From positions 664,156 to 728,155 of the forward strand of contig CAJFCJ010000013.1 of NCBI GenBank assembly GCA_904063045.1: 64,000 nt of DNA, read 5' to 3'. The notes below the pieces were generated by a model. That model did no database searches. It was not told the DNA's origin and saw nothing but the letters and a program-made list of their open reading frames with translations. This DNA comes from Dimorphilus gyrociliatus. Its lineage: Eukaryota > Animalia > Annelida. The translations under genes were made by a program, and so were the position numbers. Shown in pieces: positions 18,067 through 64,000 of this stretch (position 1 is the stretch's first letter; every line of letters begins with the position of its first letter).

Positions 18067-21000
18067 TCTTTAATTCTCCTCTCGTATTAACAATCTGTTG
18101 TTTTTTATTAAAAAAAAAACAAAAAAACAAAACAAAAATGAAGCTTTTAGTAGAGTATTTTTTTTTGTTTTCATACTAAATATAGAATAACAATCAAAAG
18201 TTATATAAAACAATAAAATAGCTAGAAAAATTAGATCATAGTATTCGTTTAATATTTCCCTATGAAATATGCTTTGGAATTATCTTAAATCTGATATTCT
18301 TTACTAAATCAAGCTGAGTATTCTTCACAGTCGAATATCTAAATTTCAAAAGAAAAGAACGAAAAATAACATGGCGACATTTCACTTCCGGTAAATTGAC
18401 TTTTATTTTTTTTTTGCGCTAAAAGTAAGTTGAAAATATGTTTTTTTCTATTGTTAAACTCCGTTATTAGTAAATCTGGTAAAATATAATTTAAAGAGGC
18501 TAATTAAAGGCGCTACAATTTCGCACAAGTAAAATTTACAGATATTTATTTGTGTGTAACTAGTTTCTTTAACAAAATAATCCAGGATCTCAGAATTGTT
18601 TTTGTACTGCAACTGTTTTCTACTATATTTAGATATGTTAAATAGTGCTGAATTGATAAATTCATTGTAAATTTAAGCTTTATTCACAACATTTTTTCCC
18701 GATTCGTTTATTTTTATCTAGTTTTTATTTAAAGTTAAAAAAGTGCATTTTTTCGTAGATAAAGAAAAATTTAAATTAAGAATAAAAAGTGTCATTAGGC
18801 TCAGGGTCACATTTTTATTCATTTATCAGATAATAGAATTGAACTTGAGATAAAGACTCTAATTGAATATTTTAAGTATTCCATTTTTATCCTTTAAAAA
18901 GTGAAAATATGAAGGGAATAATAATATTTAAAAAAAAACATTCCCTACTTAAAAAGGTTTTACCATGGCAACATGGTGTTGTTAATTACTACCAGGTAAA
19001 GAAGTTGCATAGCATTTCGTCCTGTAATAAGAATTATATCTATAAGCGCAACCTTAAGGGTAAATATAGAAGAATATCAGAAACTTAAGCAAATTAATCA
19101 TTTAAATTAGGTTAATTAATAGAAAAACGAACGCTAAAATTGGTTTACAGCATATTTTTCCATTTCATATCAAATTTCCCATTTTCCTTGACGAGTGAAG
19201 GTCTGTTTATAGAAGTTTTCCTATTCTCTTTTTTCTCTCTTTCACTCTTAGACTTCAATTATAAATGTAAATAATTATTTTACTGTTTAATAAAGGCGTC
19301 AGCAATTATTTTACAACTGTGAAAATGACTAAATTATAAATATACATATATATATATATATATATACAGTATATATAGTGTATATATAAATATAATTCGT
19401 TATTAATTAATAACTCAAGTTTCAGGATCATTATTAAGTCTAGAGTTAAAATGAGAAACACTCTATGTATATACAGTATGAGCATTTATTGTATATCGGG
19501 TTCCTCTTTCCTTCCTTTATATAAGGCGGACGTGTGGAGATAATTCCCAGTTTAATTTCTAAGATTAGATTACAAGGGCAGTAAAGTTTGCCAAATTTAT
19601 TAAAGACGGCTCTCCTTCCCGTATCGTAAGTGATACTATAATTATAAGTATTTTATCTATTTTTAAATATCCTACTATCTTTTTTTGACACAGCTATTTG
19701 TACTCTAATAATAAAAATTTAAAAAGCTGACGGAAAGAAATGCAAGATTCTGCTGTGAGATCTTTATTACAGTGAAAATAGATACATAAAATCCTTTAGT
19801 AAATTCCATACAAGATAAATATTTAATTATCATTTTTTCTATTATCTACAAATTTGGTACTTAATTTTTCTTTGAGCTGTCAAAATCATATGGAATTTTT
19901 GCATGTGTAGTATACCTTCGAGGGTAGCGTATTCTATAAAATCATAGATTATAGATAAAAGAATAGACTCTTCTCTCTAGGAAAATGACCTAGTATTTTT
20001 CCATCTTTTTCAATAACTAGACGAGAGCGTGGCAGTATTCCAGCATAGAATTTATTCTGCTTCCCTCTCCAGAGAGATGATAAAATAATTTGACAACTGA
20101 AATATTTCGTTTAGAATTCTTTTCCGATCAAATAGAGGAGCAAAAGAAAGCTGTTTACCCATTGTAAAATGATAGAAAGAGGAAAAAAAAGAGTTTGATT
20201 AGAATAAATCATAAGAAATAGCGAATATAGGATTATTTGATCAAACTTTTATTTTTCTCAAATATGAATCTCCTAATCCGATTAAATACTCTCTAAGACA
20301 ATTCTATGTACAAAGGTAAGAAATTAACAGACTTTCTACCCATAGAGTTTTTGATTAGACTGTGTTTGCCAAACAATGAAAGTAATTAAGATGAATGTAG
20401 CAAACGATTTTTCTATACTTGAGCTACAAACAAGTTGAAATAATCAGTGAGAATAGGACTACTTTTATAACATTTAAAAAGGTTTCTATATTGTATTTAT
20501 ATGGATTTTTAGAATGGGTCGAGTACTTTCTAGAGTTCTTCCTATTTAAAACTGCTTATGTATTATAAGATAAGTACATCAGTTAAATTTTGCGAATGTA
20601 ATAAGACTTAAATATTTTTATTAATTTTATTCTTCCTCTTATCCACTCTTCTCAATATTCCGCCCCTTTCACTCATTCTCTTTACAAAAGATGTAAAAAA
20701 AAATCAAATTAAACGCCTTAATTTAGTTATTCTCTATCCTTTTCTTTCAAAGATTCAACTATTTTTATATTAAACTTGATTAAGCGTGGAGAAGTTTACA
20801 AAACTAATCGAATATGGCCACATAAATTTCTCTCTCTGTCTCTCTATCTATCTGTCTCGCTGTCCGATATAAAGTAGCCATTAAACATTTGTAAACAGAA
20901 CGTTAAAGTTTCGTAGGACTGTTAAAACTAACTGTATTTATCAGAAATCTTATAGGGTTTATGTCAGATCTGTCTCTTGAAATGTGAATTAGTAAACAAA

Positions 21001-22616
21001 TAAGGAAGGAAGTTTTATTCTCAAACAGAGTACATAGATGCGTGCGTGTAAAATCTTTCTCTTTATCAATCATCTGTCTCTCTTATTTCTTTCCTTTTCT
21101 GATTATACAAAAGAAAACCCAAGAATAAACAAATGAAAAGAATATAAGAAGTTGATTGTTGTAACTCATTTTTTTTTATCTTTTAATCACTTTTCTTTGA
21201 ACCATTGTTATATATAATATTCTTTTTTGTCAATATATATATATATATATTTATATAACTAAAGTATATGTATGTAATTTATTCACAAATATTTTCATCT
21301 GACTTCATTTTAGTGTATCTTAGACTCTTTTCAAACAATTCTTAAGCCATTTGAAATAACATAAGTATCCAAACCAACGCCCATAGAACTTAAGAATAAA
21401 TATATGGCCAAGTTGATAGATAAGAATGATTAATATATCTATTAATTATTAATCCATCACTTTTACTTCCTATCATACTGACTATTTACATATCTATGCT
21501 TCTTAACACATATTTTATTAGACTTGGAAAATACTTGCAATACTTTATTTTTCCTTTTCCTTTTCTTCATGTTTTCTAGTTGTTTAACTTAGTTTTCAAA
21601 TATTTTTTAATTAAAATTATAAATTGCTTAGTGACAATAATTATTTTTGGTTTAATATAACATTGCAGTCAGTTTTTCCAGATTATATTCGGTTATCAGT
21701 TTCTCTCGACATTTTTTTTTTGATGTAGTTATACAAGAAAAAACGTTTTCGGAATTGATTTATTTTAGAGTTTTTGTATTAATCGATAATATATGCTATT
21801 TTAGCGAATTTCCTTTTTTAAAAATATTACGCTTTATTAGCGGTTGACAGGTATTTTTTCTACAAAGAGGGCTATACTTTAGTCTAGAGCTACTAGATGG
21901 CGCTTTCTTTTTCCGGACTGTTTTTATATTTCGTTTGGCGCCGCTTTTAATTTTACAACAAGGTAATTTTAATAATACATCATAAAAATATAGCCTAAAT
22001 ATATTAGATAAATACTTATTGAACCATATTTGCTACTTTTAGAGGAAATAATTGGAAAGTCTTTTGCCTGGAGCTCACCACCTCTTCCGGTATCAAGGAG
22101 ATTTTCTGATTGAATTTAATGGCTAGTAACAAAACCTTTGCTAAAAGATTTTAAAAGTGTTATTTAAGGAAGAATGATAAAAAAATCGAGTAGGATTAAA
22201 ATAGAAAGAATTGCGGCCCCTGCGAAAAGTTTGTTTGGATAGATTAGAAATGACCTCTTATCCACTATATATATTATTATTTTGTTTACAATACAATTAC
22301 ATAAGTATTTATTTACTTTTAAAGTATAATTTGCAATATAAAAACAATTAATTTATCTTAAGAGGTGTATTCCCGAAAGAAGTAAAGAGAAGAGAAGGGA
22401 ACAAAGGTCTATAGTTATCACTTTTCCCCCTCCTTCTTTCTCTCTCTCTCTCTCTATCTCTCTCTCTCCACGAAAGATGTTTAATTTTTGCACTCCGCCC
22501 CCGAGATATTTTTACGAAGGAACAAGAAATTCCGGGAGCAGCCGTTTGCAGTCTCTACTGCCTGACCTACTTTTAACTGTGTAGATTATTTTGTACTTCT
22601 CAGTAGCACTGCAAAA

Positions 22617-24535
22617 ATGGCTGATGGTAAGATGGATCTATCAAATCTAAACGAAATTGAAGATGAGGAAAAATTGCATAAAATGGTATTGCACAAAAAA
22701 TATTGTCCTTTTATAAAAAGTTCACGATTCGAACTTAAAGGAAAATTATTAATTATTCTAATAGATTAATGACACAAGCGATTTTGATGAGAGGAAGAAG
22801 ATTAGAGGAAGACTGAAGGAACTTCGAGAGAAGAGATCAGGTTCTATTTTAGTGTAGAGTATATTAAATTTATTAACAAAACTAACTTTTCTTTCCCTTT
22901 ATCGTTAAATTCTTTTGTTACCTCTGACCAAAAAACAAACATACTACGACCAATTGCAAACAACTTTTAGTCGAGTTTGAAAAACGACGCAAAGCTGCTG
23001 AAGAGGCCCGTGAGAACGCTATTAAAGAAAGGCAGAGGTTAGCGAACGAGGAGAAGGAGAGGAAATTAAAGGAATATAAAGAAAAAGCCCAACAACCTAG
23101 GATAGAAAGCAACTATGTTGAAGATTCTATTCGCAAAAGACAAAAGGAGGCAGACGAGCAAAAAGCCAAGAAACTTGCATCCTATTCCTCCCCTTCCACT
23201 ACAGGTTTTTTTTCTAATTATCCTACTCTTCCTTCCGATCTAACAGAGAGAAAATTCTCTATTTAAACTCTCTAGTCTAATGTTAGACGGGAAATTTATT
23301 ATTTATAAAAACTTGTCAGATAAAAAAGTTAGCGAAGAAACAGTCTCAAGGTCATCGAAGAGTGAAACAACAACCGATGGTAAAAAGAGAACAACTACAG
23401 TTACAACAACTACTACTCGTATCAAAGGTTACCTTCTTCCGCAAATAATTAATCGATGAGCTAATTTACTTATATGTTACGTAATTCTTTGTTTGTACAG
23501 GTGAAAATAATACTGTAACGAAGCAAACCAAACAAATAACTCAAGTGGGTGGAGTAGGTGGTACTGGATATAAAATGACAAAAGTCCAATCTCCAGGTTA
23601 GATTCTAACTAAAGAAAGAATAAAATTTATAAAAGAAAATTCTACCATTTTATTTTCATCTTTCCTTTATTAACCTCTGCGTATGTTTGGTGTGATACTG
23701 ACGTAGACGATGTTTTGGAGAAAATTACGAATAAGCTGGAAGAACATTCACTTCCCGGAACGCACGGAAGAGCCACGGTCCGGACAGAGCATTGGAATTG
23801 TCGTAAGGGGACAACCGTAAAGGATGAGAAGACGAAAATGTGGACAGGTGCATGTTCCTCCAGAAGAGAGATATACGATGTCCATGTTATTCTCTTTTTT
23901 TCTCTCTCTCTCTTTCTGTCTTTATTTTATTTTTATTAGTTATATTCTTTTTGTTCTTTTTAAAAATCTTCACCAGGTATCTGTATTAAAATTTCCTTCC
24001 TTTCTTTCCAATCACCCCTACAGCGAAATTAAACGATGGACAGGATGGCGCAGCAGGAGCGGCTGGTGGACCTGTAGTTCAAAGATCAGCCAGTACCATA
24101 AAACAAGTGATGCTTGAATGGTGTAAATCAATGACAAAGGATTATGAACATGTCGATATAAGAAACTTTTCTAATAGTTGGAATGACGGAATGGCTTTTT
24201 GCGCTTTAATCCATCATTTCTATCCAAGAACGTTTGATTTTAAAAGATTGAATCCAAAAGCCAGACGAGCAAATTTTACATTGGCCTTTACAGTTGCCGA
24301 AAAGGAGGCAGACATCGCTCCATTGCTGGATGTAGACGATATGGTCAGAATGAAAAATCCAGACTGGAAATGTGTGTTTACCTACGTTCAAAGTTTTTAT
24401 AGGCGTTTTAGAAATTGGGATGAGGAAAGCGAGAAGAAGAAGAGAGAAGAGGCGGAAAAGAAGAAGGAAGAGAAAAAAAAACAGGAAGAAAAGAAAGTAG
24501 AAGAAACCGATAAGAAAGAAGAGAATGAACAATAG
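22617..24535 (+). CDS. Smoothelin-like protein: smoothelin domain, coiled coil, C-terminal calponin-homology domain, K/E-rich tail
   Basis: Exons 22617-22685, 22765-22840, 22971-23204, 23320-23427, 23501-23596, 23707-23847, 24024-24535. DFDERKKIRGRLKELR resembles the smoothelin motif; LEWCK...NFSNSWNDGMAFCALIHHFYP...PDWKCVFTYVQSFY is the smoothelin/MICAL-type CH domain. Confidence 0.88.
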
Positions 24536-42569: not shown

Positions 42570-49472
<6,903 letters not shown>

Positions 49473-51592: not shown

Positions 51593-52521
51593 ATGGCAAT
51601 GGGAAGGTCTCTTGGTACGACTTTTGTCGTATTAGCTATCTTTGGTGTTCTTCTTTCCTTATATTTCGACCAAAATCTAGTGTCTGAAATTCTTAGTAAG
51701 TTCAGCGTGTCACTATTAGTTGTTCAAAGTCCTGCAACTCGAGTTTTTACTATAGAAGAGTTAAGGTGTGTAAAACTTTTTTGTAAAATAGAATAATTAA
51801 TTCATTTTACCCGTAGTAAATATGATGGAAGTGAAAATAGTTTGGGCCTATACTTATCCATTATGGGTGAAGTATTTGATGTAAGTAAAGGTGCCAAATT
51901 TTACGGACCAGGGGGCGGTTATCACTTTTTTTCAGGTTAATTAAATACCCTATAATGAGTATTTTTTCTAAAAATATAATCAATTTACTAGGAAGAGATG
52001 CTTCTAAAGCTTTTATTACTGGAAAATTTGAAGATGGTCTGACAGATAATGTCGATGAACTATCGCCAACGGATTTAGTAGCGCTAGTGGATTGGAAAGA
52101 CTTTTATCATAAGGAGTACAAATATGTCGGAAAGCTTGATGGATGGTTTTTTAATTCTGACGGCCAGCCGACCGAAAATTACAAAATGGTGAACGAAAAA
52201 CTAGAAATAGCAAAATTGGAAAAACACAGTGATAAACTTGATGAACAGATGTTTCCCCCTTGTAACTCCGAGTGGTCTCAAGCTGATGGTGGCTTTGTTT
52301 GGTGTTCAAAATCGTCTGGTGGAATTGAAAGAAATTGGGTAGGAGTTCCGAGAAGATATTTCAGATCTGGAAAAACTGAACCTCGTTGCGCGTGCGTCAG
52401 AACAACAGGTCCACCCTCTGACAATAGAGCAAGCAAATCAAACAACGGAGATTTGGACAACCCCAACCTTAGGGAATATCAAAATTGTGATAGACTATCT
52501 GAGAGATGTAGAGTTATGTAG
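51593..52521 (+). CDS. CYB5D2: Neuferricin (cytochrome b5 domain-containing protein 2, MAPR family), 3 exons
   Basis: N-terminal hydrophobic anchor, RVFTIEEL|SKYDG...[29 protein letters not shown]|[11 protein letters not shown], and the C-terminal [14 protein letters not shown]...WVGVPRR..RCACV typical of CYB5D2. Confidence 0.93.
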
Positions 52522-52578
52522 ACTTTAAGATTTGACTATCTTTTTCATTCAGCATTTCAATCATTCCAATTAATTTCT

Positions 52579-53902
52579 TTATTCTTTATCAAGTTCTGAA
52601 TGCATTTTCATGATAATATTTAAGCATAAATCATCTTCTAGTATAGCTCCAGACTCTTTATGGAATACTAACGAGTGTGATTGTTTCTTTGCCAAATCGA
52701 TGTCTAATAAACAAAGAGTATTGGCATAAAATGCTTAATAAATAATCATAATTAAGGAAGATATATATTTGGAATATATTACCGTTGTAGCATTCAATAT
52801 GTGTAGTTTGTGGAAGTTCTAAATATTGTTCCAGTTTTTCTTTAGTCTTTTTTGATTCACTGTCATTAGAAAACACAAAGAGGAAGGGTAGATGATTGTG
52901 CCTTAGCAGGAAATAAGAGCCAGATGACTAAGAGGATTAAAAAGTTTATTAAAAAGTGTTTGTCGTGGTAAATTAACATCAGACATTGTTCATATTGATT
53001 CCTGACACAAATTGTGCTACTGCTAATGACTGCTGTTTGCTCATATTTCTACCATACAAAAACTTTATGGACGGTTTTAGGATTAAGGTAGATAAAACTT
53101 GTTGTAATATGGATCCGTTGTTATTCCAATCAGTGTAGAATTTCGAAATTTTTACTTGTCTATAGCGTAAATCATAGTAAGTTTTGATTTATTGCAGCAA
53201 TAAATTTACCTATCATCGAAAGAAAATATATTTGGTGGTAAAATGGATGTAAATTGTTTTAATCGCATTGAATTCCTAATTTGAGTTGCAAGTGTTAAAC
53301 CAGCTGCTATTGCATTTCCATGACAAACAATGGAATCTATCCTGAAGAGTTTATAAAAGAAATATAGTTTAAACATTGAATTTAAATTCTCTTTATTTTG
53401 AGCTCACCTATCAATGGATATATTGTTCAGAAAATTTAACACGTATAGTGCTAGTTCTTCGGTTTCAAAGTTGAAAAATTTCCTATCTATTCTACTTTCT
53501 ATCCGTGACCCTCCGAACACTATTAGTGGATAATTACTCAAAAACAGAATCGAAAGATATATTTGGAGACATACAAGGCCAATCTGGGATAATAACTCTG
53601 CAGTGATTTTCATGAAACTTTTCTGCCAACCTTCTTAAATCCGATTTATCACCGGGGATGTTTGGAAGGAGGAGCACATTTGGGTGTTTCAATTTAACCC
53701 CGACTGGCAGTTCATGGCCAGTGTCGATATATTTTGCGTTAATTTTTATAGGATTGGGTCTCTCCTGCCACATATCATTATTGGTAAGTAAATGTACATT
53801 TAACTCCTTCCAGCAAGACCCGCTATAAGAAGTTTTCAAAATATTATAGATTTTCTTAGCATGTCGATTTATAATGAGTGATCGAGTTAATTGGTGAATC
53901 AT
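52579..53902 (-). CDS. Alpha/beta-hydrolase fold protein, DUF1057-like, probably catalytically inactive
   Basis: Five to six phase-consistent exons. INAKYIDT, VLLLPNIPGDKSDL, CRVIIPDWPLFGGS and FETEELALYVLNFL..IDSIVCHGNA parallel DUF1057 segments (HGSPGSHNDF, INYPGFG, GHSRG) as I recall them. Confidence 0.75.
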
Positions 53903-54369
53903 AATTTCCAGATTAAATTTGTACTATCGTAAAGTTATCTACATTTTATGAATAATTACAGCATTCACGAAGTTTTTGTTGGAAGTTACACTTTCAAAAC
54001 AGACCAACACGTGTTCCGGTTTCAAACTTCCGGTGAAAAAATGGTTCTCAATAGATTAATATATATAGTTTAATTAAAAAGTATATTATACAATAAGAGA
54101 TATTTTAAATACACTTTTAAAGCGTTCCAATGTACTTTTATAGAACAACGAATATGAAAAAGTCTTAATTAGATGTGACAGGATGTAGAATCATCTGAAA
54201 TTTTCTCGCGCCTGCGCAAAGTGCGGTAACAAGGCTGCGAAATATTAAAATTTTATTGATTATTGCTTATTTTAGTATGATTTCGCTATCTTGGTATATC
54301 CTTGATTTAAACTAAACACAAATCACGGATTTCTTACGTATTTTCAATATATGAACCTTAAAATACAAG

Positions 54370-57198
54370 ATGAAGGATCGTTTACAAGCAATTAAAGCTG
54401 TAAGTACAATATCGCTCCCCTACTGAATGTTTCTTTTAAATAAGTCGTTTAAGAGCTGATCCGTAGTAATGAATTAACATGACTTATACCGAACTATAAT
54501 AACCTTTGTCAGTACTGTAAATTATTTTATTATCTTTTTTAATCAGAATAATTAACGAATTAGAGAAATAGCTTTTTTGTCATTTGTGGGCGTTTGAGGT
54601 AATTGAAGATCTATATTTGGCCCGTTATCTCTTTGGATTACTAATAACGACGCTGACAAATGAGCGTTTTAACAATGTAAAGAGGTTTATCGAGCATAAT
54701 TGTTGCTCTCCATCATTATGGAAAATTATTGTAAAGAAATTAAGCAGAGTTGTAACTTTGTAACGATACACGGTGCACTTTGTCTTAATATAAAAAAAGC
54801 TATTTTATTCTTTTCACGACAGTCAAACTGTAATTGTCCTTAATTATATACTATCGAATTGACAAAAATGAATAACTTTTGTTTCTTATAGGTCCAAAGT
54901 GATGATGACGATGCACAAGATGAAACAACCGTACACGCAGATAACCGAAATGGTTTCATGGATGAATTTTTCGAACAGGTAAACTTTTGTAGGCGTTAAT
55001 TCTGTTAATCAATTACTTCTATAAAATTTGTCGAAAGCATTCAGAGAATCAATAGGTATAATTCATATATAAATGATTCATCTTTGAATCATTTATAAAT
55101 GCGTCAACGATGAACGATTGAGTAACAGCAACACGATATAACAATTTTTTCATTTTAGGCCAAAAAATAAACTGAATATTCGATAATAAATGTAATGGTG
55201 ATTACAGATGTCAATCTATTTAAGGCTGGTCTCTCTGATGTTATCCTCTTTTAAGTACTAATAAGATCATAGACTAAATTGGTGGAAATTAGCGTTGAAA
55301 AAAAAATAGTGCCGTTTTTGTGTTCCTTAAACCCATCTGAAATGTAAAATTAACGTATAATTGTTCTCCAGTTGTTCATTAATTGCAACGCTCTATTGAT
55401 CTGATACTGTGCGTTGTTTGTCGAAGCGCTCTGAAAACGACAATGTTTCACTCATTCCTTTTTACCGCGTTTTTTTTAGAGCTTTACATATGAAAATTAC
55501 GTCAATAAGTTGGCAATTGATTACCTACTGAATTTTTATTGTTTGTAGGTTGATGACATTAGGCAGATGATTGAAAGAATACAAGCAAATGTAGATAATG
55601 TAAAGAAAATGCACAGCGATATACTTGCAGCACCTAACAATGATGAGTCTTGTAGTAAGTAATTTTTTCTTTAATGATAAATTAAGGGTATTAATTTACG
55701 AATGCCTGTGCAGAGATGAAGACCGAATTAGATGAATACATGGCAGATATAAAGAAAAATGCAAACAAAGTCCGAAATAAGCTAAAAAGTAAGTATATAT
55801 GTAATGTTTTAAAAGCTAATAATATTATTTTCCTGTTTGAAGTCAATACTTTGTGTGTGGTGCAGGAAACGTAAGCGAATACGATATAATTTGCTATATT
55901 GAATAGATATTTACGTCCCAGGTATCATACAAGCGCACAGAGAGACATTCTAATAATTTTTTCCATCTATACAATATAAATCGTAAATCTTTAATCAGTT
56001 ATTACAGAAAAGGATACAATAACACTGGCGAATAAAGCCTTGATTAGCGTTATAAGTTTATACGATCAATTATAGTGTCTAGAATGAAAATCATTTAGAC
56101 CCTTACTTTGAATGATATTAACTTTGTCCAATGATTCTCTTCCTTACAGCCATAGAGCACAATATAGAACATGATCAGCAAAGTACAACTCAATCAGCCG
56201 ACTTGCGGATACGGAAGACTCAGGTATGCTCATATTTTGTTTCGAATGGGCTTAGGTTTCACCGACTACACTATTTTCTCGGATATCACTTCTTGTATTA
56301 ATATAGATTCTCTTATATGTAAGCTTAGAACAATAATTTGCCTGCTAAATTGAACTAATAGACTCGTGTATTTTAGTTTAGTTAATTTTTGATCTTTCAT
56401 CACGACTTTTCAATATCTTAGATTTATTATTATTCAATTGAATCTAGATTACTTTAGTCAATAGGTACTATTATATTCTTAAACATCTAATTTCTTTAAA
56501 CTTTTTCTACTTTTTTCTTCATCAACAACCTGGTGATTGATTTATACTTTGTTATCTAAGAAGAAGAAACTTTAATTAATTCATTTCGTCTAAATGTTTC
56601 AATTGTTACATTAATTTTGTACTTTTTTTTTATTATTTTTTTTGAATTTAAAAAAAAAAAGAAAAAAGAACATTTTGAAACTAAACCAACCTTTCAAATT
56701 AAATTATTATAATATTTAATTTGCATATGCAAATATATTTATATATATGTATATATATATATATATATGTATTTGTATAATATTATTACATATTATTAAT
56801 AAGTTGAAGAAATTTTTTCAATTTTATTTTTGAAAAGAAGAGGAAAATTTTGTCTTTTTTGAACTTTTATTTGGTTGAAAATTTTTTCTTGAGTTAATTC
56901 TTTATTTATTGATTATTCTAATTTAAGTTATTATTTATCTATTAAAATATCATCTATAATAGCTAAATGCATGTAGTGAATAATTATTTGGCACTTTGAT
57001 ACGTTTTTTTTTATATTACCTCTACCCCTATCCTTTCCCCCGCTACTCCCTACGCATGCAATTTTAATATAAATATATAAATTTATACAAATATATAAAT
57101 AATCGGGAGTTTATTTAATATTTATATGTTTATATTTATATACCCACTTAAACAAATATACATATATGTATATACTGCAAGATATATATATATATATT

Positions 57199-57229
<31 letters not shown>

Positions 57230-60200
57230 ATATTTTAGTATATATATATATTGTTGCGAATGAATCTAGCTAGTAATTGAAGAGAAAATGCTAATTGTTA
57301 AAGATCACGCAAAATATTTTAAGAAAGCGTATTTGGGAAGTATTTGTCATTTCATGTTGTTCTCTAGTACTCGACGATTTCTCGTAAGTTCATAGAAGTG
57401 ATGAACGACTACAATAAGGCGCAAATCGAATACAGAGAAGGGTGTAAAAAAAGAATTCAGCGTCAAATGGAAATTAGTAAGAAAATTATTTATTACTTTT
57501 TTATAACTTTTTGCTTCTTTTTTTTACTTTGATTTGAATTTTTTTTATCTTTTTTTTTTAAAAAAAAAAAAGTTGATTTAAATTGCCTCTTACCTTGTAC
57601 ACGCCATCGGTTTACGACTATTAACTCATGCGAAAAATATAATGGTGACATATGTAGAATAATAAATATCTAATATTTTATGTATATCCTTGACTATTAT
57701 ATTACTTAACTACTATATATTTAAATTTTAATCGTTGGGTGAATGCGTATATGATTATGAAAAAGAAACACGTTGTAAAATAAGCTGTAGCATGACGATC
57801 GTTGTTTGAAATATTATGCGTGAATTTAGCTCTCGGTATAAGTATAAGGAAATGTGCCCTCTTCAAGAAAACCCAATCCAATTAAGGGTAATAAAATTTG
57901 CAAAATTATTACTAAGAAGTACTAAGTTGAAATACGAATATGAAAAGAATATTAACAGAAAATACAATAAGGAATAAATAAATTTAGGATTGATTCATTG
58001 ATTCAAATTGTGTCTACCACCAGGTTGTTATGATAGAGATGCTTCTCTTATGAATATTTATTATAGCAAGTTTCATTAATTCCAGAGTTACCAATATTGT
58101 TTATTGAAACAATACTTTCATATATATACAAATTTGTTTGTATATATGCCAAATTTACTTAAAATACATATATATATATATTTATATATGTTGATTCGAA
58201 GGATAACTTTGCAGCATGCCACATTGTCCCGTAAATTCGTGGAAGTGATGAATGACTACAATGCGTGCCAGATTGAATACAGGCAAAAGTGCAAAAAGCG
58301 TATTCAACGTCAGCTCGAGATTAGTAAGGACAACGTTTACATATTGCTAAGCATTTCACAAAAAATACTGTTGTTGTTAGCTGGTGAAAGATGCTTTCTT
58401 TTGAGTACAGCCCGTACTATTTATATATGCTTATAGCCCTTAAATATTTATCATCCACCATCTAGCAACTAAGGTGGTTTGTAAAAAAAACCGCGTTGCT
58501 CGTTGGATATCAATGTATTTGTTGTACAACGCGATTTTTGATTACTAACAAGAACGGATGAAGATTTCAGTAGTTTTTAATTCCTCGTACATATCATTCG
58601 ATGGTTTTAACTTAAAAGGCTTTGTTTGGGGCGTGTTGTGAACGCTTTGAAAAATTATGTTGTGTGACTGAGTCGGAGTATTTTGGAAATCGCATGACAA
58701 GCGCGTCCTATGACTCCGTTGAGCCGTAGATGTATGTTTCCCTAAAACTTTAAATCATCTCTTTTTTTCTCTCTCTTTCTTTCTCTCTCTCTCTCTTTCT
58801 CTTTATCTTTTTCTCTTTTTCTCTCGCTATCTACAAAAACTTTTTTTAAATTTTATTTTAAAAGTCGGCTGAACGGTTTCTTCGGACTAATCTAGGTGGC
58901 GTGTCATTGATATTGTGTTGCCTAAATATCATTATATTATTATTATTATTTTCATTATTATTTCTCTTTTTTTTTCCTAACACCGATTAAGTGAAATTTT
59001 GTAAAAGTGTTGTTCTAAAATATAGCCGGAAAGGCAACGACGAACGAAGAGCTAGAAGACATGTTAGAATCTGGAAATCCAACTATATTTTCCCAAGGCA
59101 TAATTATGGAGACGCAACAAGCTAAACAATCTTTGAAAGACATCGAAGCTAGACATAACGATATTATTAAATTAGAAAACAGTATTAAGGAATTACACGA
59201 TATGTTTATGGACATGGCCATGTTGGTTGAAAGTCAGGTGCTGTCAATAACGGATTTTAATTTAATTAATATCCATTATCACATTCCTTTTTCATATCAA
59301 CTTTTTAGGGAGAAATGATTGACAGGATAGAGTATAATGTGGATCAATCTGTCGACTACATAGAGACGGCCAAAAAAGATACCAAAAAGGCTGTCAAGTA
59401 TCAGAGTAAAGCAAGACGGGTACGTATTATTTTCTATATAGATATTCTTTAAATTTTGTCCTGCAAGAATATTACTATTAGATATGCATTGCAAAAACTT
59501 TCTATTAGATAAACAGATAATGTTGTAAATATTTTTCTTTTTTTTTTTAAATTCAATTTTTATTCCAAATTTTTTTTTTTTAAATAACTTTAGTATTAAA
59601 ATTCTTTATTTTTTTTTATTACCCACTCTGTTATATTTTATACATATCCTCCTTCATTAGATGAAGATATGTATTATAATTACTGTTTTGGTTGTTCTTG
59701 CCATAATCGCACTTATTATTGGTCTTTCTGTGAGAAAAAGAAAATAACAATATTAACCATATAATAAGGTATTAACAGTGTATAAACGCTTTAAAACATA
59801 ATTTTTGCTAATTTTGATCATAAATTAATTTCGTTTTTAAATAATTATGTTGATCAGTATCGAAGAGAATAATTGATTTTGTTTCATAAAAAAGAAATCA
59901 GAAATAACTGTTTCTTTTCGCTTTAAAATGCCTAGAAAGAAAGAAAAAAAACAAATTTATTAAAACATTAAAAACAAAAAGTAATCACTTAGCTAAGCTA
60001 AAGTAGATTTTTTGTTTTGATAGAAAAAGGAAAATTCTTAATTGAGAAAGTTATTTTTTTATTTCAATATTCTTTTTATTTCTTTTTCAGAAGCTGATTT
60101 GTATTATCGTCTTAGTTATTGTCATATTAGCTATAATAGCAATTATTCTGGCCGTCTCACTATCATAAATCTCTTCCCCCCCCTCACTATTGGTCAAGAG

Positions 60201-60497
60201 ACAGTTATAGGAAGAGTTTTTTTCTCTATTTTGTATTGTATTATCATGCGTTTCCCGCGCGTGATTGACAGCCAATTTTTTAATATCCTATTTACCTTTT
60301 CTATTCGTATCTTATTTCCTTATGCTGTTAAAATATACACTTGCCTGTGTTTGTCAAAAGAGGCCTATAAAGCAACAATGCCTCTTTAAAAAAAAAGCGA
60401 CTCTCTATGCGTTCTTAATTCAATTGACTGCACTATTTTTTTTACTTTTCTTAAAGTTATGTTGTCTGCCAGCTTTAAACTACTGCATCATATATGC

Positions 60498-60532
<35 letters not shown>

Positions 60533-61015
60533 AAAGCGTATTGTGAGATTGCCAAGTGTAAACTTTAAAGCTTTATATGCTTAAAATAATATGGATTATT
60601 ATTTATAATTATTTTTTATAGGTTATCAATTTTGTAATGTTCATATAGGTTGTCAAAGGTTATTAATACCATTGTAGGCTAGAGGTTGTTTGACAGTGCC
60701 ATGACTTTTTCTCGGCTATTAATAGTTAAAGAATTTTTAGTAATATATACATATAACGAAACCAAAAATCTACTATTTACTTAGTATTCTTTGTAACTAC
60801 TTAAAGAATTTCTCTTTTCTTTTTCTATGAAATGTAGATAATAGATAAAAAAATTTAATTATGCAAATTTATGCGAAAGAAAGAAAAAGCTAATAACAGT
60901 AAATTGTAGTTTTTTCTAAAAGTAAAAAAAAAAGGAAGGTTTTGGTTACTGCTTGAAAAGTGCGTGATACTTAATATACTTGGCTTCTACAATACGTATT
61001 AGTAATTTTTGTGTA

Positions 61016-61046
<31 letters not shown>

Positions 61047-61311
61047 ATATATATGTATATATATATATCGACCGACCTTTATAAAAATGTGAATTATTAT
61101 ATACTATATATTTAAATATTTATTTGGATTGCCTGGAGCTTTCGTTGTTTTTTTTTTTTTTTTGGTATAATTAAGAACGTGTGTTAAGTTATTTTCGAAT
61201 GCCAAATTCACGTATTGTGCACATGTATACATTCCCTGAAAAAAAAAATTTAGCAGGAAACTGTATAGCCTAGGAAATTTTTTATAGTCGGAGCGCTTTG
61301 TTTTATATTCA

Positions 61312-61352
<41 letters not shown>

Positions 61353-61723
61353 ACCGTATTTTATAAACGAATACGGCATTTAACCGTTAATATTTGTTGA
61401 TTTGTTTACTGAATAAACTATTATTATATGGTCACAATATATTCAATTTTTTTTATATAGATGTTTCAATCATTTTTTGTTTTGTTGTTATTATTTTTTT
61501 CGCATGACGAATGCATCATCGTATTTTAGAAACTTACTGTCTTCACTTTTCCCTTTTTGAGGTAAAATTTGAATTAAATGTTTTACGGGTTTTTCATTAA
61601 CTTTACTAACAAACGTTTTGTTTATTATTTGTCTTTTTACAGAAGAAAATTTTGATTTTAATCTGCTTAGCGGTGTTGGTTGTAGTAATTTGTGCTACAT
61701 TCGGAGGTGTCTTCGGAGGCTAG
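54370..61723 (+). CDS. STX1: Syntaxin-1 with a duplicated mutually exclusive Hc exon and three alternative TM terminal exons
   Basis: Exons 54370-54399 ([10 protein letters not shown]), 54892-54978 (FMDEFFEQ), 55549-55654, 55714-55788, 56150-56223 (ADLRIRKTQ), [57368-57476 | 58215-58323], 59026-59237 ([32 protein letters not shown]), 59309-59419, [59661-59747 | 60091-60168 | 61643-61723]. Confidence 0.97.
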
Positions 61724-63774
61724 AAGATCTCAAGTGCTTGCATGGACATTGCGCTCAAAACTAAGTGAATCTTCTTTCCTGTATTCTGTTCACTATAAAT
61801 GCACAAAAATGTTTCTCTCTTGCTCGAAACTTAAACGGGGGCAGTATTATAAAGGAAAACGTTCTTTTTAACGTGCCTTCGTTTTTATCATGTCTCCTAC
61901 AATTATTCGAGCAAGATTGAAAAAAGACTTTAGGAATTTGGTAGTAGTTTGAGCAATTCAAAGTAGCAAATTTTTTCTGTGAACCAGTCATCGATTTAAT
62001 TTTTTCTTTTTATAGAGCAATTTCTGCCTACAACATGCAATGCTGTAGCAATACTTAACCTTCTTAGGATTTTACTTGTACATACTATTGTGTGCTGTTT
62101 GAATGTAAATAAGTTTCTAATTAATGTATTAACTGTACTTAGCTGTGTATAACTTTTCTAGAACTTGCGAATTAGATATTTAACGGATTTAAATTTAAAA
62201 ACAAATAACAAAAAAAACGAGTGAAAGCTAATAAATTTTACTTATTAGCTTTGACTGTCTGAAGCACACTTCTTAGGTCTTAGCTTCTGCAAATATGCTA
62301 AACAGAAAAAGAATTGTACATACATTTGTTAATGTCATATGCACTAAAGTTAGATACCTCATTTTTACCTTATACTTTTAATTAATAATTTGAAATTAAG
62401 TAAAGATTAGAGAAAATTAGAATAAGAAATCCATTGTCAAAAAAAAAAAACAAAAACACTAAAAAGATGAAAAGTATAATATTACATATTCATAGAAATC
62501 TTGGAAAATAACTTAATTTGTTCTTTTCTTTTTATGTTTTGCTTCATAAAGATATTATTCATTTGTTATGTACCATAGATACTTCAAGTTAAAGAAATTA
62601 TTCAGTTTTTAACCAGTATATCTGTGGTATATTTATTTTCAAAGTCTGTGATAGAGCGGTTTATTTTGTTATTAAAGATGTATCAGTTTAATCAAATGTA
62701 TTCCAAAACCTGTATACTATTATACAATTTCATGCATACTAAAAACTTTGATCTGTTTTATGATTTCTTTTTGTTTGTTTGTTTGTTTATCAATCTATCA
62801 AATCAAAATCTATCTCGTTATGAAGTGTAAAAAGTGAAAAAAGAGTGTTTTTATTTTTTTTCTTTTTTAGTGTCAAAGTATTCTTTTTTAACGATTCTGC
62901 TTTGTTTATTCGTTCGCTAGCTAATCTGTTTATTTGTTTGTTTCCTTTTACTCTGCAAAGATGCTTTCAGTTCGGGCAAAAACCTTTGTTTTTTTTTTAT
63001 TTTTTGGATTCCTTTTTACTTCAAACTTATAACCGAAAGAAAATAATGCACACAAAACACAGTAATATATACACATAAAAAGGGAAGAAAAGCTATTTTC
63101 TTCCTTTTTTAAGTCAGAATACATGGTCATAAGCTAAAAATCTCTTATCTATCTTTAATGAAAGGTTTTAGCTATCTGAACTGGTTTATCGTTTCTCCAA
63201 AAAAAAAAAAAATAATGGTCAATAACCGTGTTTATTATCCACGTTTTATTCTTACTATGATTATTATTATTTTTATTATTATCTCTTTTTGTATATTGTG
63301 TGGGGGACAAGTAGAAATTTAGCAGTTCAACGTATTCCCTATGCCTTTAACTTTCAAATAAAGGAAATCTAGAATACGCAGCTTTGAAAAAGAAAATTAC
63401 TAAACGTTTATTATTTTTATTTAGCATTTAATATATTCAATAATACGAAAGTTGAATAGGTGAAACTATATACTATGGAATGTAAATCTCTGTTAATCAT
63501 TACGTGACGGATTGCGAATTGATTATATTTTGACAGCCTATATTTTCTGATGCAATTCCTCTGGACGGAACCTTTTTTTATATTATTACGACGAGGAATT
63601 TATTTATCTAATAAATTGACTATAATAACTTAAATAATTTTTTCCCAATTATTATAAATTATTAAATGTATATAATGGTCGAGTTTTCCCCATATTTTGC
63701 TGAATATAAGTTAGAACTATTTTTCGGAATTCCGGAAGTACGTCATAATAACCTTTCATGAGTCATTTTCAAGA

Positions 63775-63961
63775 ATGAACGTAGAAGGAAAAGGACATGT
63801 TACATTAAAATCATCTGATATGGCTTTGTTTGGTGAAGAAATAGCAAAATATATATTAGTTAATCCTGATTGTACAACAAATAAACCTTATTTTGAAGAA
63901 TTAATCGAAAAATTTGCCGAGGATCCTGATTTCGTCCAAAATCAAATACGTCATCAGCTTG
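63775..63961 (+). CDS. First coding exon of an unidentified gene running off the window
   Basis: ATG 63775, MNVEGKGHVTLKSSDMALFGEEIAKYIL...IRHQL, probable GT donor at 63961. ETS-like CCGGAAGT and AP-1-like TGAGTCA lie just upstream. Confidence 0.65.
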
Positions 63962-64000
63962 GTTGGTTTTAATATGACTACATTTATAACGACTTTGTTT

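What the first reader, a model, noticed from the sequence alone, without database searches (positions are those of the whole stretch)
57368..58323. Syntaxin-1: duplicated mutually exclusive exon encoding the Habc Hc helix
Seen: two 109-nt exons (3n+1) with the same phases: [36 protein letters not shown] (57368-57476) and [36 protein letters not shown] (58215-58323). Synonymous sites have diverged heavily while both frames stay intact, which suggests both are used. Known: Hc and the following linker control the closed conformation and Munc18/Munc13 gating. A TGCATG lies upstream at 56968-56973.
Basis: partly seen in the sequence, partly recalled or inferred. Interest (0 to 1): 0.7.

Follow-up and report, generated by a model that had tools for sequence, protein, structure and literature searches.

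The report
Ancient swappable exon pair in syntaxin-1
The worm's nerve-terminal fusion protein syntaxin-1 has two intact alternative copies of one 109-base exon; the same pair is kept in annelids, brachiopods, ribbon worms and molluscs, where RNAs carry one copy or the other, so it is an old and apparently undescribed way to make two syntaxins differing beside the protein's open/closed switch.

Summary
Two 109-nt exons lie at 57368-57476 (A) and 58215-58323 (B). They share the same phase and have AG/GTAAG sites. They are 71% identical in DNA and 75% in protein, with synonymous sites saturated. The window is Dimorphilus gyrociliatus gene DgyrCDS9419, a syntaxin-1. The deposited model uses exon A only; B is unannotated.

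The exon encodes rat Stx1A residues 120-155, which is the Hc helix up to its junction with the linker.

The pair is ancient. Tandem A-then-B exons, each 109 nt, occur in Owenia, Lingula and seven metagenome contigs. RefSeq isoforms of Lineus, Octopus, scallops and Dreissena differ only in these 36 residues. Intronless transcript contigs carry either A or B. All A-type exons form one clade (95/94). Outgroups have a single, B-like exon. The leech lost A and flatworms lost B.

Including both exons, or neither, shifts the frame into an early stop.

I obtained no RNA evidence for exon B in Dimorphilus itself. The functional effect, tuning of closed/open gating, is inferred. I found no paper describing the pair. 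Earlier scan notes report similar exon pairs in other genes of this genome, but not this one.

The parts
54370..61723 (+). Syntaxin-1 gene (Dimorphilus gyrociliatus DgyrCDS9419): start codon to the stop of the last alternative membrane-anchor exon
   Evidence: P0015 maps exon by exon onto the window. Pfam Syntaxin and SNARE hits.
56150..56223 (+). Constitutive exon upstream of the pair (end of Hb, loop, start of Hc); ends in phase 0 (CAG|gtatgc)
57368..57476 (+). Exon A, 109 nt. This is the 'A-type' Hc exon (Y1, I4, A18, M34) and the one used in the deposited gene model. It has a strong pyrimidine tract at its acceptor.
58215..58323 (+). Exon B, 109 nt. This is the 'B-type', ancestral-like Hc exon (H1, L4, C18, L34). 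It is unannotated in the deposited model and has a purine-interrupted, weaker-looking acceptor tract.
59026..59237 (+). Constitutive exon downstream of the pair (linker with the LE motif, first half of the SNARE motif); enters in phase 1
56968..56973 (+).

Best explanation
Exons A and B are a tandem-duplicated, mutually exclusive exon pair of the single syntaxin-1 gene. Each mRNA takes one of them. This gives two syntaxin-1 proteins that differ at 9 of 36 residues in the Hc helix (rat numbering 120-155). The duplication happened once, before flatworms, bryozoans, nemerteans, brachiopods, molluscs and annelids diverged. B keeps the ancestral sequence and A is the derived copy. Exclusivity is enforced at least by the reading frame. 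Each exon is 109 nt (3n+1), so including both or neither creates an early stop, and such RNAs would be expected to be degraded. What is shown: the anatomy, the conservation, the single origin, and one-or-the-other use in relatives. What is inferred: that B is spliced in Dimorphilus, and that the swap tunes how firmly the linker helix locks syntaxin closed and how Munc13 and Munc18 act on it. The residues known to hold the linker (R142, K146) and to bind Munc13 (R151, I155) are invariant in both forms. The A/B differences lie beside them (143/144, 147, 150, 153) and at 120, 123 and 137.
For: Anatomy and frame. Including both exons gives a stop 6 codons into B; skipping both gives a stop 9 codons into the next exon. 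Identity of the gene. Tandem A-then-B 109-nt exons with AG...GT occur in Owenia (L013), Lingula (L015) and metagenome contigs L003-L009. RefSeq isoform pairs differ only within the 36 residues in Mizuhopecten, Pecten/Argopecten, Dreissena, Octopus and Lineus X5 versus X2. Intronless transcripts carry one form: L011 has A; L001 and L002 have B. P0006 (A, Logan contig L020) and P0256 (B) are identical in the 100 residues on each side of the exon, as are squid-like P0017 (A) and P0219/P0220 (B). Single origin: all 20 A-type exons form one clade (95/94) and Dimorphilus A pairs with Owenia A (94/80). Outgroups have one B-like exon (Gordionus locus; hemichordates, insects and a vertebrate). Purifying selection on B: Dimorphilus B versus Owenia B is 31/36 aa identical with third-position identity 0.33, dN 0.094 and dS saturated. 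Fixed A/B differences and invariant functional residues. Roles of R142, K146, residue 150, R151 and I155 come from PMC10895456 and PMC13398699.
Against: There are no RNA reads for this species. The only Dimorphilus syntaxin-1 protein in the collection uses A. The acceptor of B has a poor pyrimidine tract. The leech has only B and flatworms have only A, so either form alone suffices for life and a lineage can drop one. RefSeq isoforms are computed models. No biochemical difference between A and B has been measured.
Confidence: 0.85

Rival explanations
1. Exon B is a leftover in Dimorphilus. The ancestral pair was functional, but this miniaturised worm now splices only A, as the deposited model shows, and B has not yet decayed.
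For: The deposited CDS uses A only. No B-containing Dimorphilus protein is on record. The pyrimidine tract before B is weak. Other lineages did lose one copy.
Against: B keeps its frame, both splice sites and every B-specific residue (H1, A2, L4, V9, C18, L34). It is 31/36 identical to Owenia B while synonymous sites are saturated. In the lineages that lost a copy, no recognisable remnant is left. A long-unused exon in this fast-compacting genome should therefore have gone.
Confidence: 0.08
2. The two exons arose by independent, lineage-specific duplications, or are kept alike by gene conversion, and the cross-phylum similarity of 'A-type' exons is convergence.
For: Rotifers have their own tandem pair that is not A-type. 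Both Dimorphilus exons share two unusual residues (E21, K28), which could hint at exchange between the copies.
Against: All A-type exons from six phyla form one clade (95/94) apart from B and the outgroups. The order (A upstream of B), the size and the phase are the same everywhere. Within each species A and B are only 66-72% identical in DNA, with no long identical tract.
Confidence: 0.03
3. The pair mainly serves dosage control. Regulated double inclusion or double skipping makes frame-shifted RNAs that are degraded, and the protein difference between A and B is neutral.
For: Both aberrant patterns give early stops.
Against: The A- and B-specific residues have been fixed over more than half a billion years in many phyla. 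This is not expected if the protein difference were neutral.
Confidence: 0.04

Closest known systems
SNAP-25a/SNAP-25b (vertebrate Snap25 exon 5a/5b)
   Same: It is a tandem-duplicated, mutually exclusive exon pair in a plasma-membrane SNARE of the same fusion complex. The exons are closely spaced and 9 of 39 residues differ (here 9 of 36). The variable part spans the end of a helix and the start of a linker. The pair is ancient and conserved (PMC2581893).
   Different: It is a different protein and region (SNAP-25 N-terminal SNARE motif and palmitoylation linker, against the syntaxin Hc helix). It occurs in bony vertebrates, not Spiralia. Its physiology has been tested in mice; this pair is untested.
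Syntaxin 3A/3B (vertebrate STX3) and C. elegans unc-64 A/B
   Same: These are alternative exons within a plasma-membrane syntaxin gene that give cell-type-specific isoforms.
   Different: [quoted passage not shown] The pair here changes the regulatory Habc domain instead. The Dimorphilus gene additionally has three alternative anchor exons.
Squid s-syntaxin (PDB 1S94) and rat syntaxin-1A (e.g. 3C98, 9OJZ)
   Same: Exon A is most like the squid protein (shared Y1, I4, M34). Exon B is most like rat Stx1A residues 120-155 (shared H1, L4, L34).
   Different: The crystallised squid protein is only the A form. Squid-like transcripts with the B form also exist. Vertebrates, insects, hemichordates and a nematomorph have only the B-like exon.

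Membership tests
Tandem-duplicated mutually exclusive exons | Two adjacent homologous exons of equal length and phase within one gene | tested here: met
   Both are 109 nt, both enter in phase 0, they are 71% identical in DNA and lie 738 nt apart
Tandem-duplicated mutually exclusive exons | Both copies have usable splice sites and open frames | tested here: met
   AG acceptor and GTAAG donor at both; no stops. The same holds in 9 other genomic loci.
Tandem-duplicated mutually exclusive exons | Mature RNAs contain exactly one of the two (in relatives) | tested here: met
   Intronless contigs L011 (A), L001/L002 (B), L020 (A), and the pairs P0006/P0256 and P0017/P0219. RefSeq isoforms differ only in this exon.
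Tandem-duplicated mutually exclusive exons | Mature RNAs contain exactly one of the two (in this species) | not testable with these tools
Only an A-containing protein is on record.
Tandem-duplicated mutually exclusive exons | A mechanism that penalises joint inclusion or joint skipping | tested here: met
   The 3n+1 length means that both patterns give early stops. No convincing competing RNA pairing was found: the (TA)n tracts before both exons are complementary, but such tracts are common in the window.
Syntaxin-1 (Qa-SNARE of the plasma membrane) | Habc domain (PF00804), SNARE motif (PF05739) and a C-terminal membrane anchor | tested here: met
   Exon-by-exon Pfam hits; anchor exons; the full-length deposited protein P0015 carries PF00804 and PF05739.
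Syntaxin-1 (Qa-SNARE of the plasma membrane) | Closest solved relatives are neuronal syntaxin-1, with the known switch residues conserved | tested here: met
   Best PDB hits are rat Stx1A and squid s-syntaxin. R142, C145, K146, R151 and I155 are invariant in A and B.

The most novel reading that the evidence does not exclude
Across Spiralia the A/B choice is a cell-type switch that sets how tightly syntaxin-1 stays closed and how readily Munc13 opens it. Examples would be neuronal versus other secretory cells, or synapses with different release properties. On this reading the switch is a splicing-based counterpart, over 500 million years old, of the vertebrate split into STX1A/1B/2/3. Classic squid and Aplysia/Lymnaea work would then have used different forms without knowing it.
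Probability: 0.3. Interest if true: 0.75.

Novelty: new member of a known kind. Interest (0 to 1): 0.6.

Why it matters
The open/closed switch of syntaxin-1 is central to how synaptic vesicles are primed, and it is studied mainly with artificial mutants such as the LE mutant and R151A/I155A. Here nature offers two conserved versions of the helix that carries the docking residues for the linker and for Munc13. They are kept side by side in one gene across many phyla and were dropped in opposite directions by leeches and flatworms.

This gives directly testable natural variants. It may also matter for interpreting work on squid, Aplysia, Lymnaea and Schistosoma syntaxin, where one form was cloned or is the only one left. 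It also corrects the Dimorphilus and Owenia gene models, each of which misses one exon. Combined with the three anchor exons, it shows that one Dimorphilus gene can encode six syntaxin-1 forms.

Tried and rejected
A local tblastn inside a script used window 52001-64000 as subject. Later scripts masked or skipped the place.

2. Rbfox idea. There is a single TGCATG, with no positional conservation in 8 other loci. Rejected.

3. Competing RNA structure. The (TA)n tracts before both exons can pair (30 nt, 90%). Such microsatellites are common throughout the window, so this is not taken as evidence.

4. A Dimorphilus B isoform in the protein collection. None was found.

5. Share of k-mers in RNA-like runs. 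This cannot separate A from B use.

6. Literature. Ten searches found no description of an Hc exon pair in syntaxin-1. The library holds only open papers.

7. Lineus X5 and Saccoglossus loci were not on record.

8. Joined model. I did not build or search a joined exon-B protein. One local script translated short exon ends joined together, only to check the frame.

Full report
**Observation.** The two stretches are exactly as described.
- Exon A (57368-57476) follows ...ttctctag and is followed by gtaaga.
- Exon B (58215-58323) follows ...tttgcag and is followed by gtaagg.
- Each is 109 nt, enters in phase 0 and leaves in phase 1.
- They share 77/109 bases and 27/36 residues. Of the 27 identical residues, 13 use different codons. 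NG86 gives dN 0.197 with synonymous sites saturated.
- Each exon alone passes the Pfam gathering score for the Syntaxin domain, at profile positions 95-130 of 157.

**The gene.** The surrounding exons give a complete syntaxin-1 on the + strand.
- Start codon at 54370.
- Exons at 54892, 55549, about 55713, and 56150-56223.
- The A/B pair.
- 59026-59237 (linker and first half of the SNARE motif).
- 59309-59422 (second half of the SNARE motif).
- Three alternative membrane-anchor exons ending at 59747, 60168 and 61723.

The deposited protein DgyrCDS9419 of Dimorphilus gyrociliatus (P0015) contains the exon A peptide exactly. It maps onto the window exon by exon, using A and the third anchor exon. 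The window is therefore D. gyrociliatus. Exon B and two anchor exons are missing from the public model.

**What the exon encodes.** Searches against solved structures place both exons on rat syntaxin-1A residues 120-155 (native numbering in 9OJZ). This runs from within Hc to the point where the linker starts (residue 157 according to PMC10895456). Exon A is most similar to squid s-syntaxin (1S94). Exon B is most similar to rat Stx1A. This was the first hint that the two types are older than this worm.

**Relatives: genomic arrangement.** A pattern scan of metagenome contigs with the A/B alignment gave 12 loci. A local tblastn with the window's exons showed that seven genomic contigs (L003-L009) carry an A-type exon 480-1140 nt upstream of a B-type exon, followed by the next exon.

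Loci of named species were fetched through their proteins.

| Species | Locus | Exons found |
|---|---|---|
| Owenia fusiformis (deep-branching annelid) | L013 | A at 47667-47774 and B at 48215-48322; its annotated protein uses B |
| Lingula anatina (brachiopod) | L015 | A at 20962 and B at 21345 |
| Helobdella (leech) | L014 | B only |
| Schistosoma (flatworm) | L016 | A only |
| Macrostomum (flatworm) | L017 | A only |
| Gordionus (nematomorph, outgroup) | L019 | one B-like exon |

In every locus the exons are 109 nt with AG...GT at the same codon positions.

**Relatives: use in RNA.**
- Three metagenome contigs are intronless. L011 encodes a full 291-aa syntaxin with A. L002 (292 aa) and L001 carry B.
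- A search with the A-type region returned 60 proteins; every one that carries a source name is spiralian. They include RefSeq isoforms of Lineus, Octopus, Argonauta, scallops, Dreissena, Mercenaria and Watersipora, and proteins of Lottia, Macrostomum and many parasitic flatworms.
- A search with the B-type region found B isoforms of the same species on the same contigs.
- Pairwise alignment shows that the paired isoforms have equal length and differ only inside the 36 residues. This holds in Mizuhopecten, Pecten/Argopecten, Dreissena, Octopus, and Lineus X5 versus X2.
- Among unnamed proteins from 1-1.5 kb contigs, which must be spliced RNA, two pairs are identical over the 100 residues on each side of the exon but carry A versus B. 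These are P0006/P0256 and squid-like P0017/P0219-P0220.
- P0006 sits on a 1039-nt Logan contig whose ORF translates without interruption (L020).

**One origin.** A maximum-likelihood tree of 48 exon peptides gave these results:
- All 20 A-type exons fall in one clade (95/94). They come from annelids, a brachiopod, a nemertean, molluscs, a bryozoan, flatworms and metagenome contigs.
- Dimorphilus A is sister to Owenia A (94/80).
- The outgroups separate (88/77).
- B shares its states at positions 1, 4, 9, 25, 31 and 34 with the outgroups. B is therefore the ancestral-like copy and A the derived one.
- The alignment has only 36 columns, so finer branching is unresolved.
- Rotifers have two tandem 109-nt exons of their own, but neither is A-type. 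I treat this as a probable separate duplication.

**Is B alive in Dimorphilus?** This could not be tested directly. No B-containing Dimorphilus protein is in the collection. The indirect evidence is as follows.
- B keeps its frame, both splice sites and all B-specific residues.
- Against Owenia B it is 31/36 identical, while third codon positions are only 33% identical (dN 0.094, dS saturated).
- In lineages that lost a copy, no remnant is detectable.
- Both Dimorphilus exons carry E at position 21 and K at position 28, states that are rare in the other species sampled. There is no long identical DNA tract between them. This fits both copies adapting to the same partner surfaces, although old gene conversion cannot be excluded.
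- The acceptor of B has a weaker pyrimidine tract than that of A. This fits a regulated or minor exon.

**Mechanism.**
- Shown: with 3n+1 exons, including both gives a stop six codons into B, and skipping both gives a stop nine codons into the next exon (a local frame check on short joined exon ends, not searched anywhere).
- Inferred: such RNAs are removed by nonsense-mediated decay.
- No specific regulatory element was identified. The lone TGCATG is at chance level and is not positionally conserved. The (TA)n tracts upstream of both exons can pair, but they are generic in this genome.

**Likely function (inference).**
- R142 and K146 hold the linker helix through E166 and L165, and residue 150 also contacts L165 (PMC10895456).
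- R151 and I155 dock the Munc13 MUN domain (PMC13398699).
- All of these, and C145, are invariant in both A and B in every species examined.
- The fixed or near-fixed A/B differences sit at 120 (Y/H), 123 (I/L), 137 (A/C) and 153 (M/L), and more loosely at 121, 128, 136, 143/144, 147 and 150.
- On an ideal helix, the C-terminal differences fall on the face opposite the hydrophobic core and between the two functional patches (angles).
- The most economical reading is that the swap adjusts the stability of the closed form, or its opening, without touching the core machinery. No measurement exists.

**Comparison with what is known.**
- The closest analogue is the SNAP-25 exon 5a/5b pair: tandem, mutually exclusive, 9 of 39 residues different, ancient, and physiologically important in mice (PMC2581893).
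- Known alternative splicing within syntaxins changes the C-terminal SNARE half and the anchor (STX3A/3B, PMC11476516; unc-64, PMC4946901). It does not change the Habc domain.
- The A/B isoforms are present as computed RefSeq models. Ten full-text searches found no paper describing them.
- I therefore file this as a new member of a known kind (tandem mutually exclusive exons), not a new mechanism.

**Limits.**
- There are no reads for this species.
- RefSeq isoforms are predictions, although independent transcript contigs agree with them.
- The tree rests on a short alignment.
- The organisms behind the metagenome contigs are unknown.

Noticed in passing
window 59661-59747, 60091-60168, 61643-61723: There are three alternative last exons, each encoding a membrane anchor and a stop. 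The deposited model uses only the third. With the A/B pair, the gene could give six proteins. An earlier first-reader note (s1-084187) covers them.
   Followed up: partly
L013 50984-51097 and 51156-51269 (Owenia); Lineus isoforms, alignment columns 236-263; L001 988-1029: The exon for the second half of the SNARE motif is also duplicated in tandem in Owenia, varies between Lineus isoforms, and appears as a second copy behind a retained intron in L001. Dimorphilus has only one copy. This may be a second mutually exclusive pair in spiralian syntaxin-1, reminiscent of STX3A/3B.
   Followed up: partly
L018 1864-1971 and 2083-2190 (Rotaria sordida): Rotifers have two tandem 109-nt Hc exons separated by 110 nt. 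One is B-like and one is strongly diverged; neither is A-type. The deposited proteins (343-376 aa) contain both copies, which looks like a mis-annotated exclusive pair.
   Followed up: partly
L014 (Helobdella), L016 (Schistosoma), L017 (Macrostomum): The losses run in opposite directions. The leech keeps only B and flatworms keep only A, with no detectable remnant of the other copy.
   Followed up: yes
window 59026-59237: This exon is one piece in Dimorphilus but is split by an intron in Owenia, Lingula, Helobdella, Macrostomum, Schistosoma, Gordionus and the metagenome contigs. This is an intron loss, in line with the compact genome.
   Followed up: no
window 57118-57263 and 58124-58195: (TA)n-rich tracts lie upstream of both exons and can pair with each other (30 nt at 90%, 57208-57237 with 58160-58189). 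Similar tracts occur at many other places in the window, so their significance is unclear.
   Followed up: partly
L015 14861-14932 / 20469-20540 and 20962-21452 / 22913-23403 (Lingula): The block holding the upstream exon and the A/B pair appears twice with identical peptides. It is either an assembly duplication or a recent segmental duplication.
   Followed up: no
P0061 (Anopheles dirus, 461 aa), P0325 (Blomia tropicalis, 431 aa): These are over-long syntaxin models that contain the Hc segment twice, about 165-170 residues apart. They are probably fused tandem genes or assembly repeats, not exon pairs.
   Followed up: no
I worked beside it and sent none of its letters to any search tool afterwards.
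   Followed up: no
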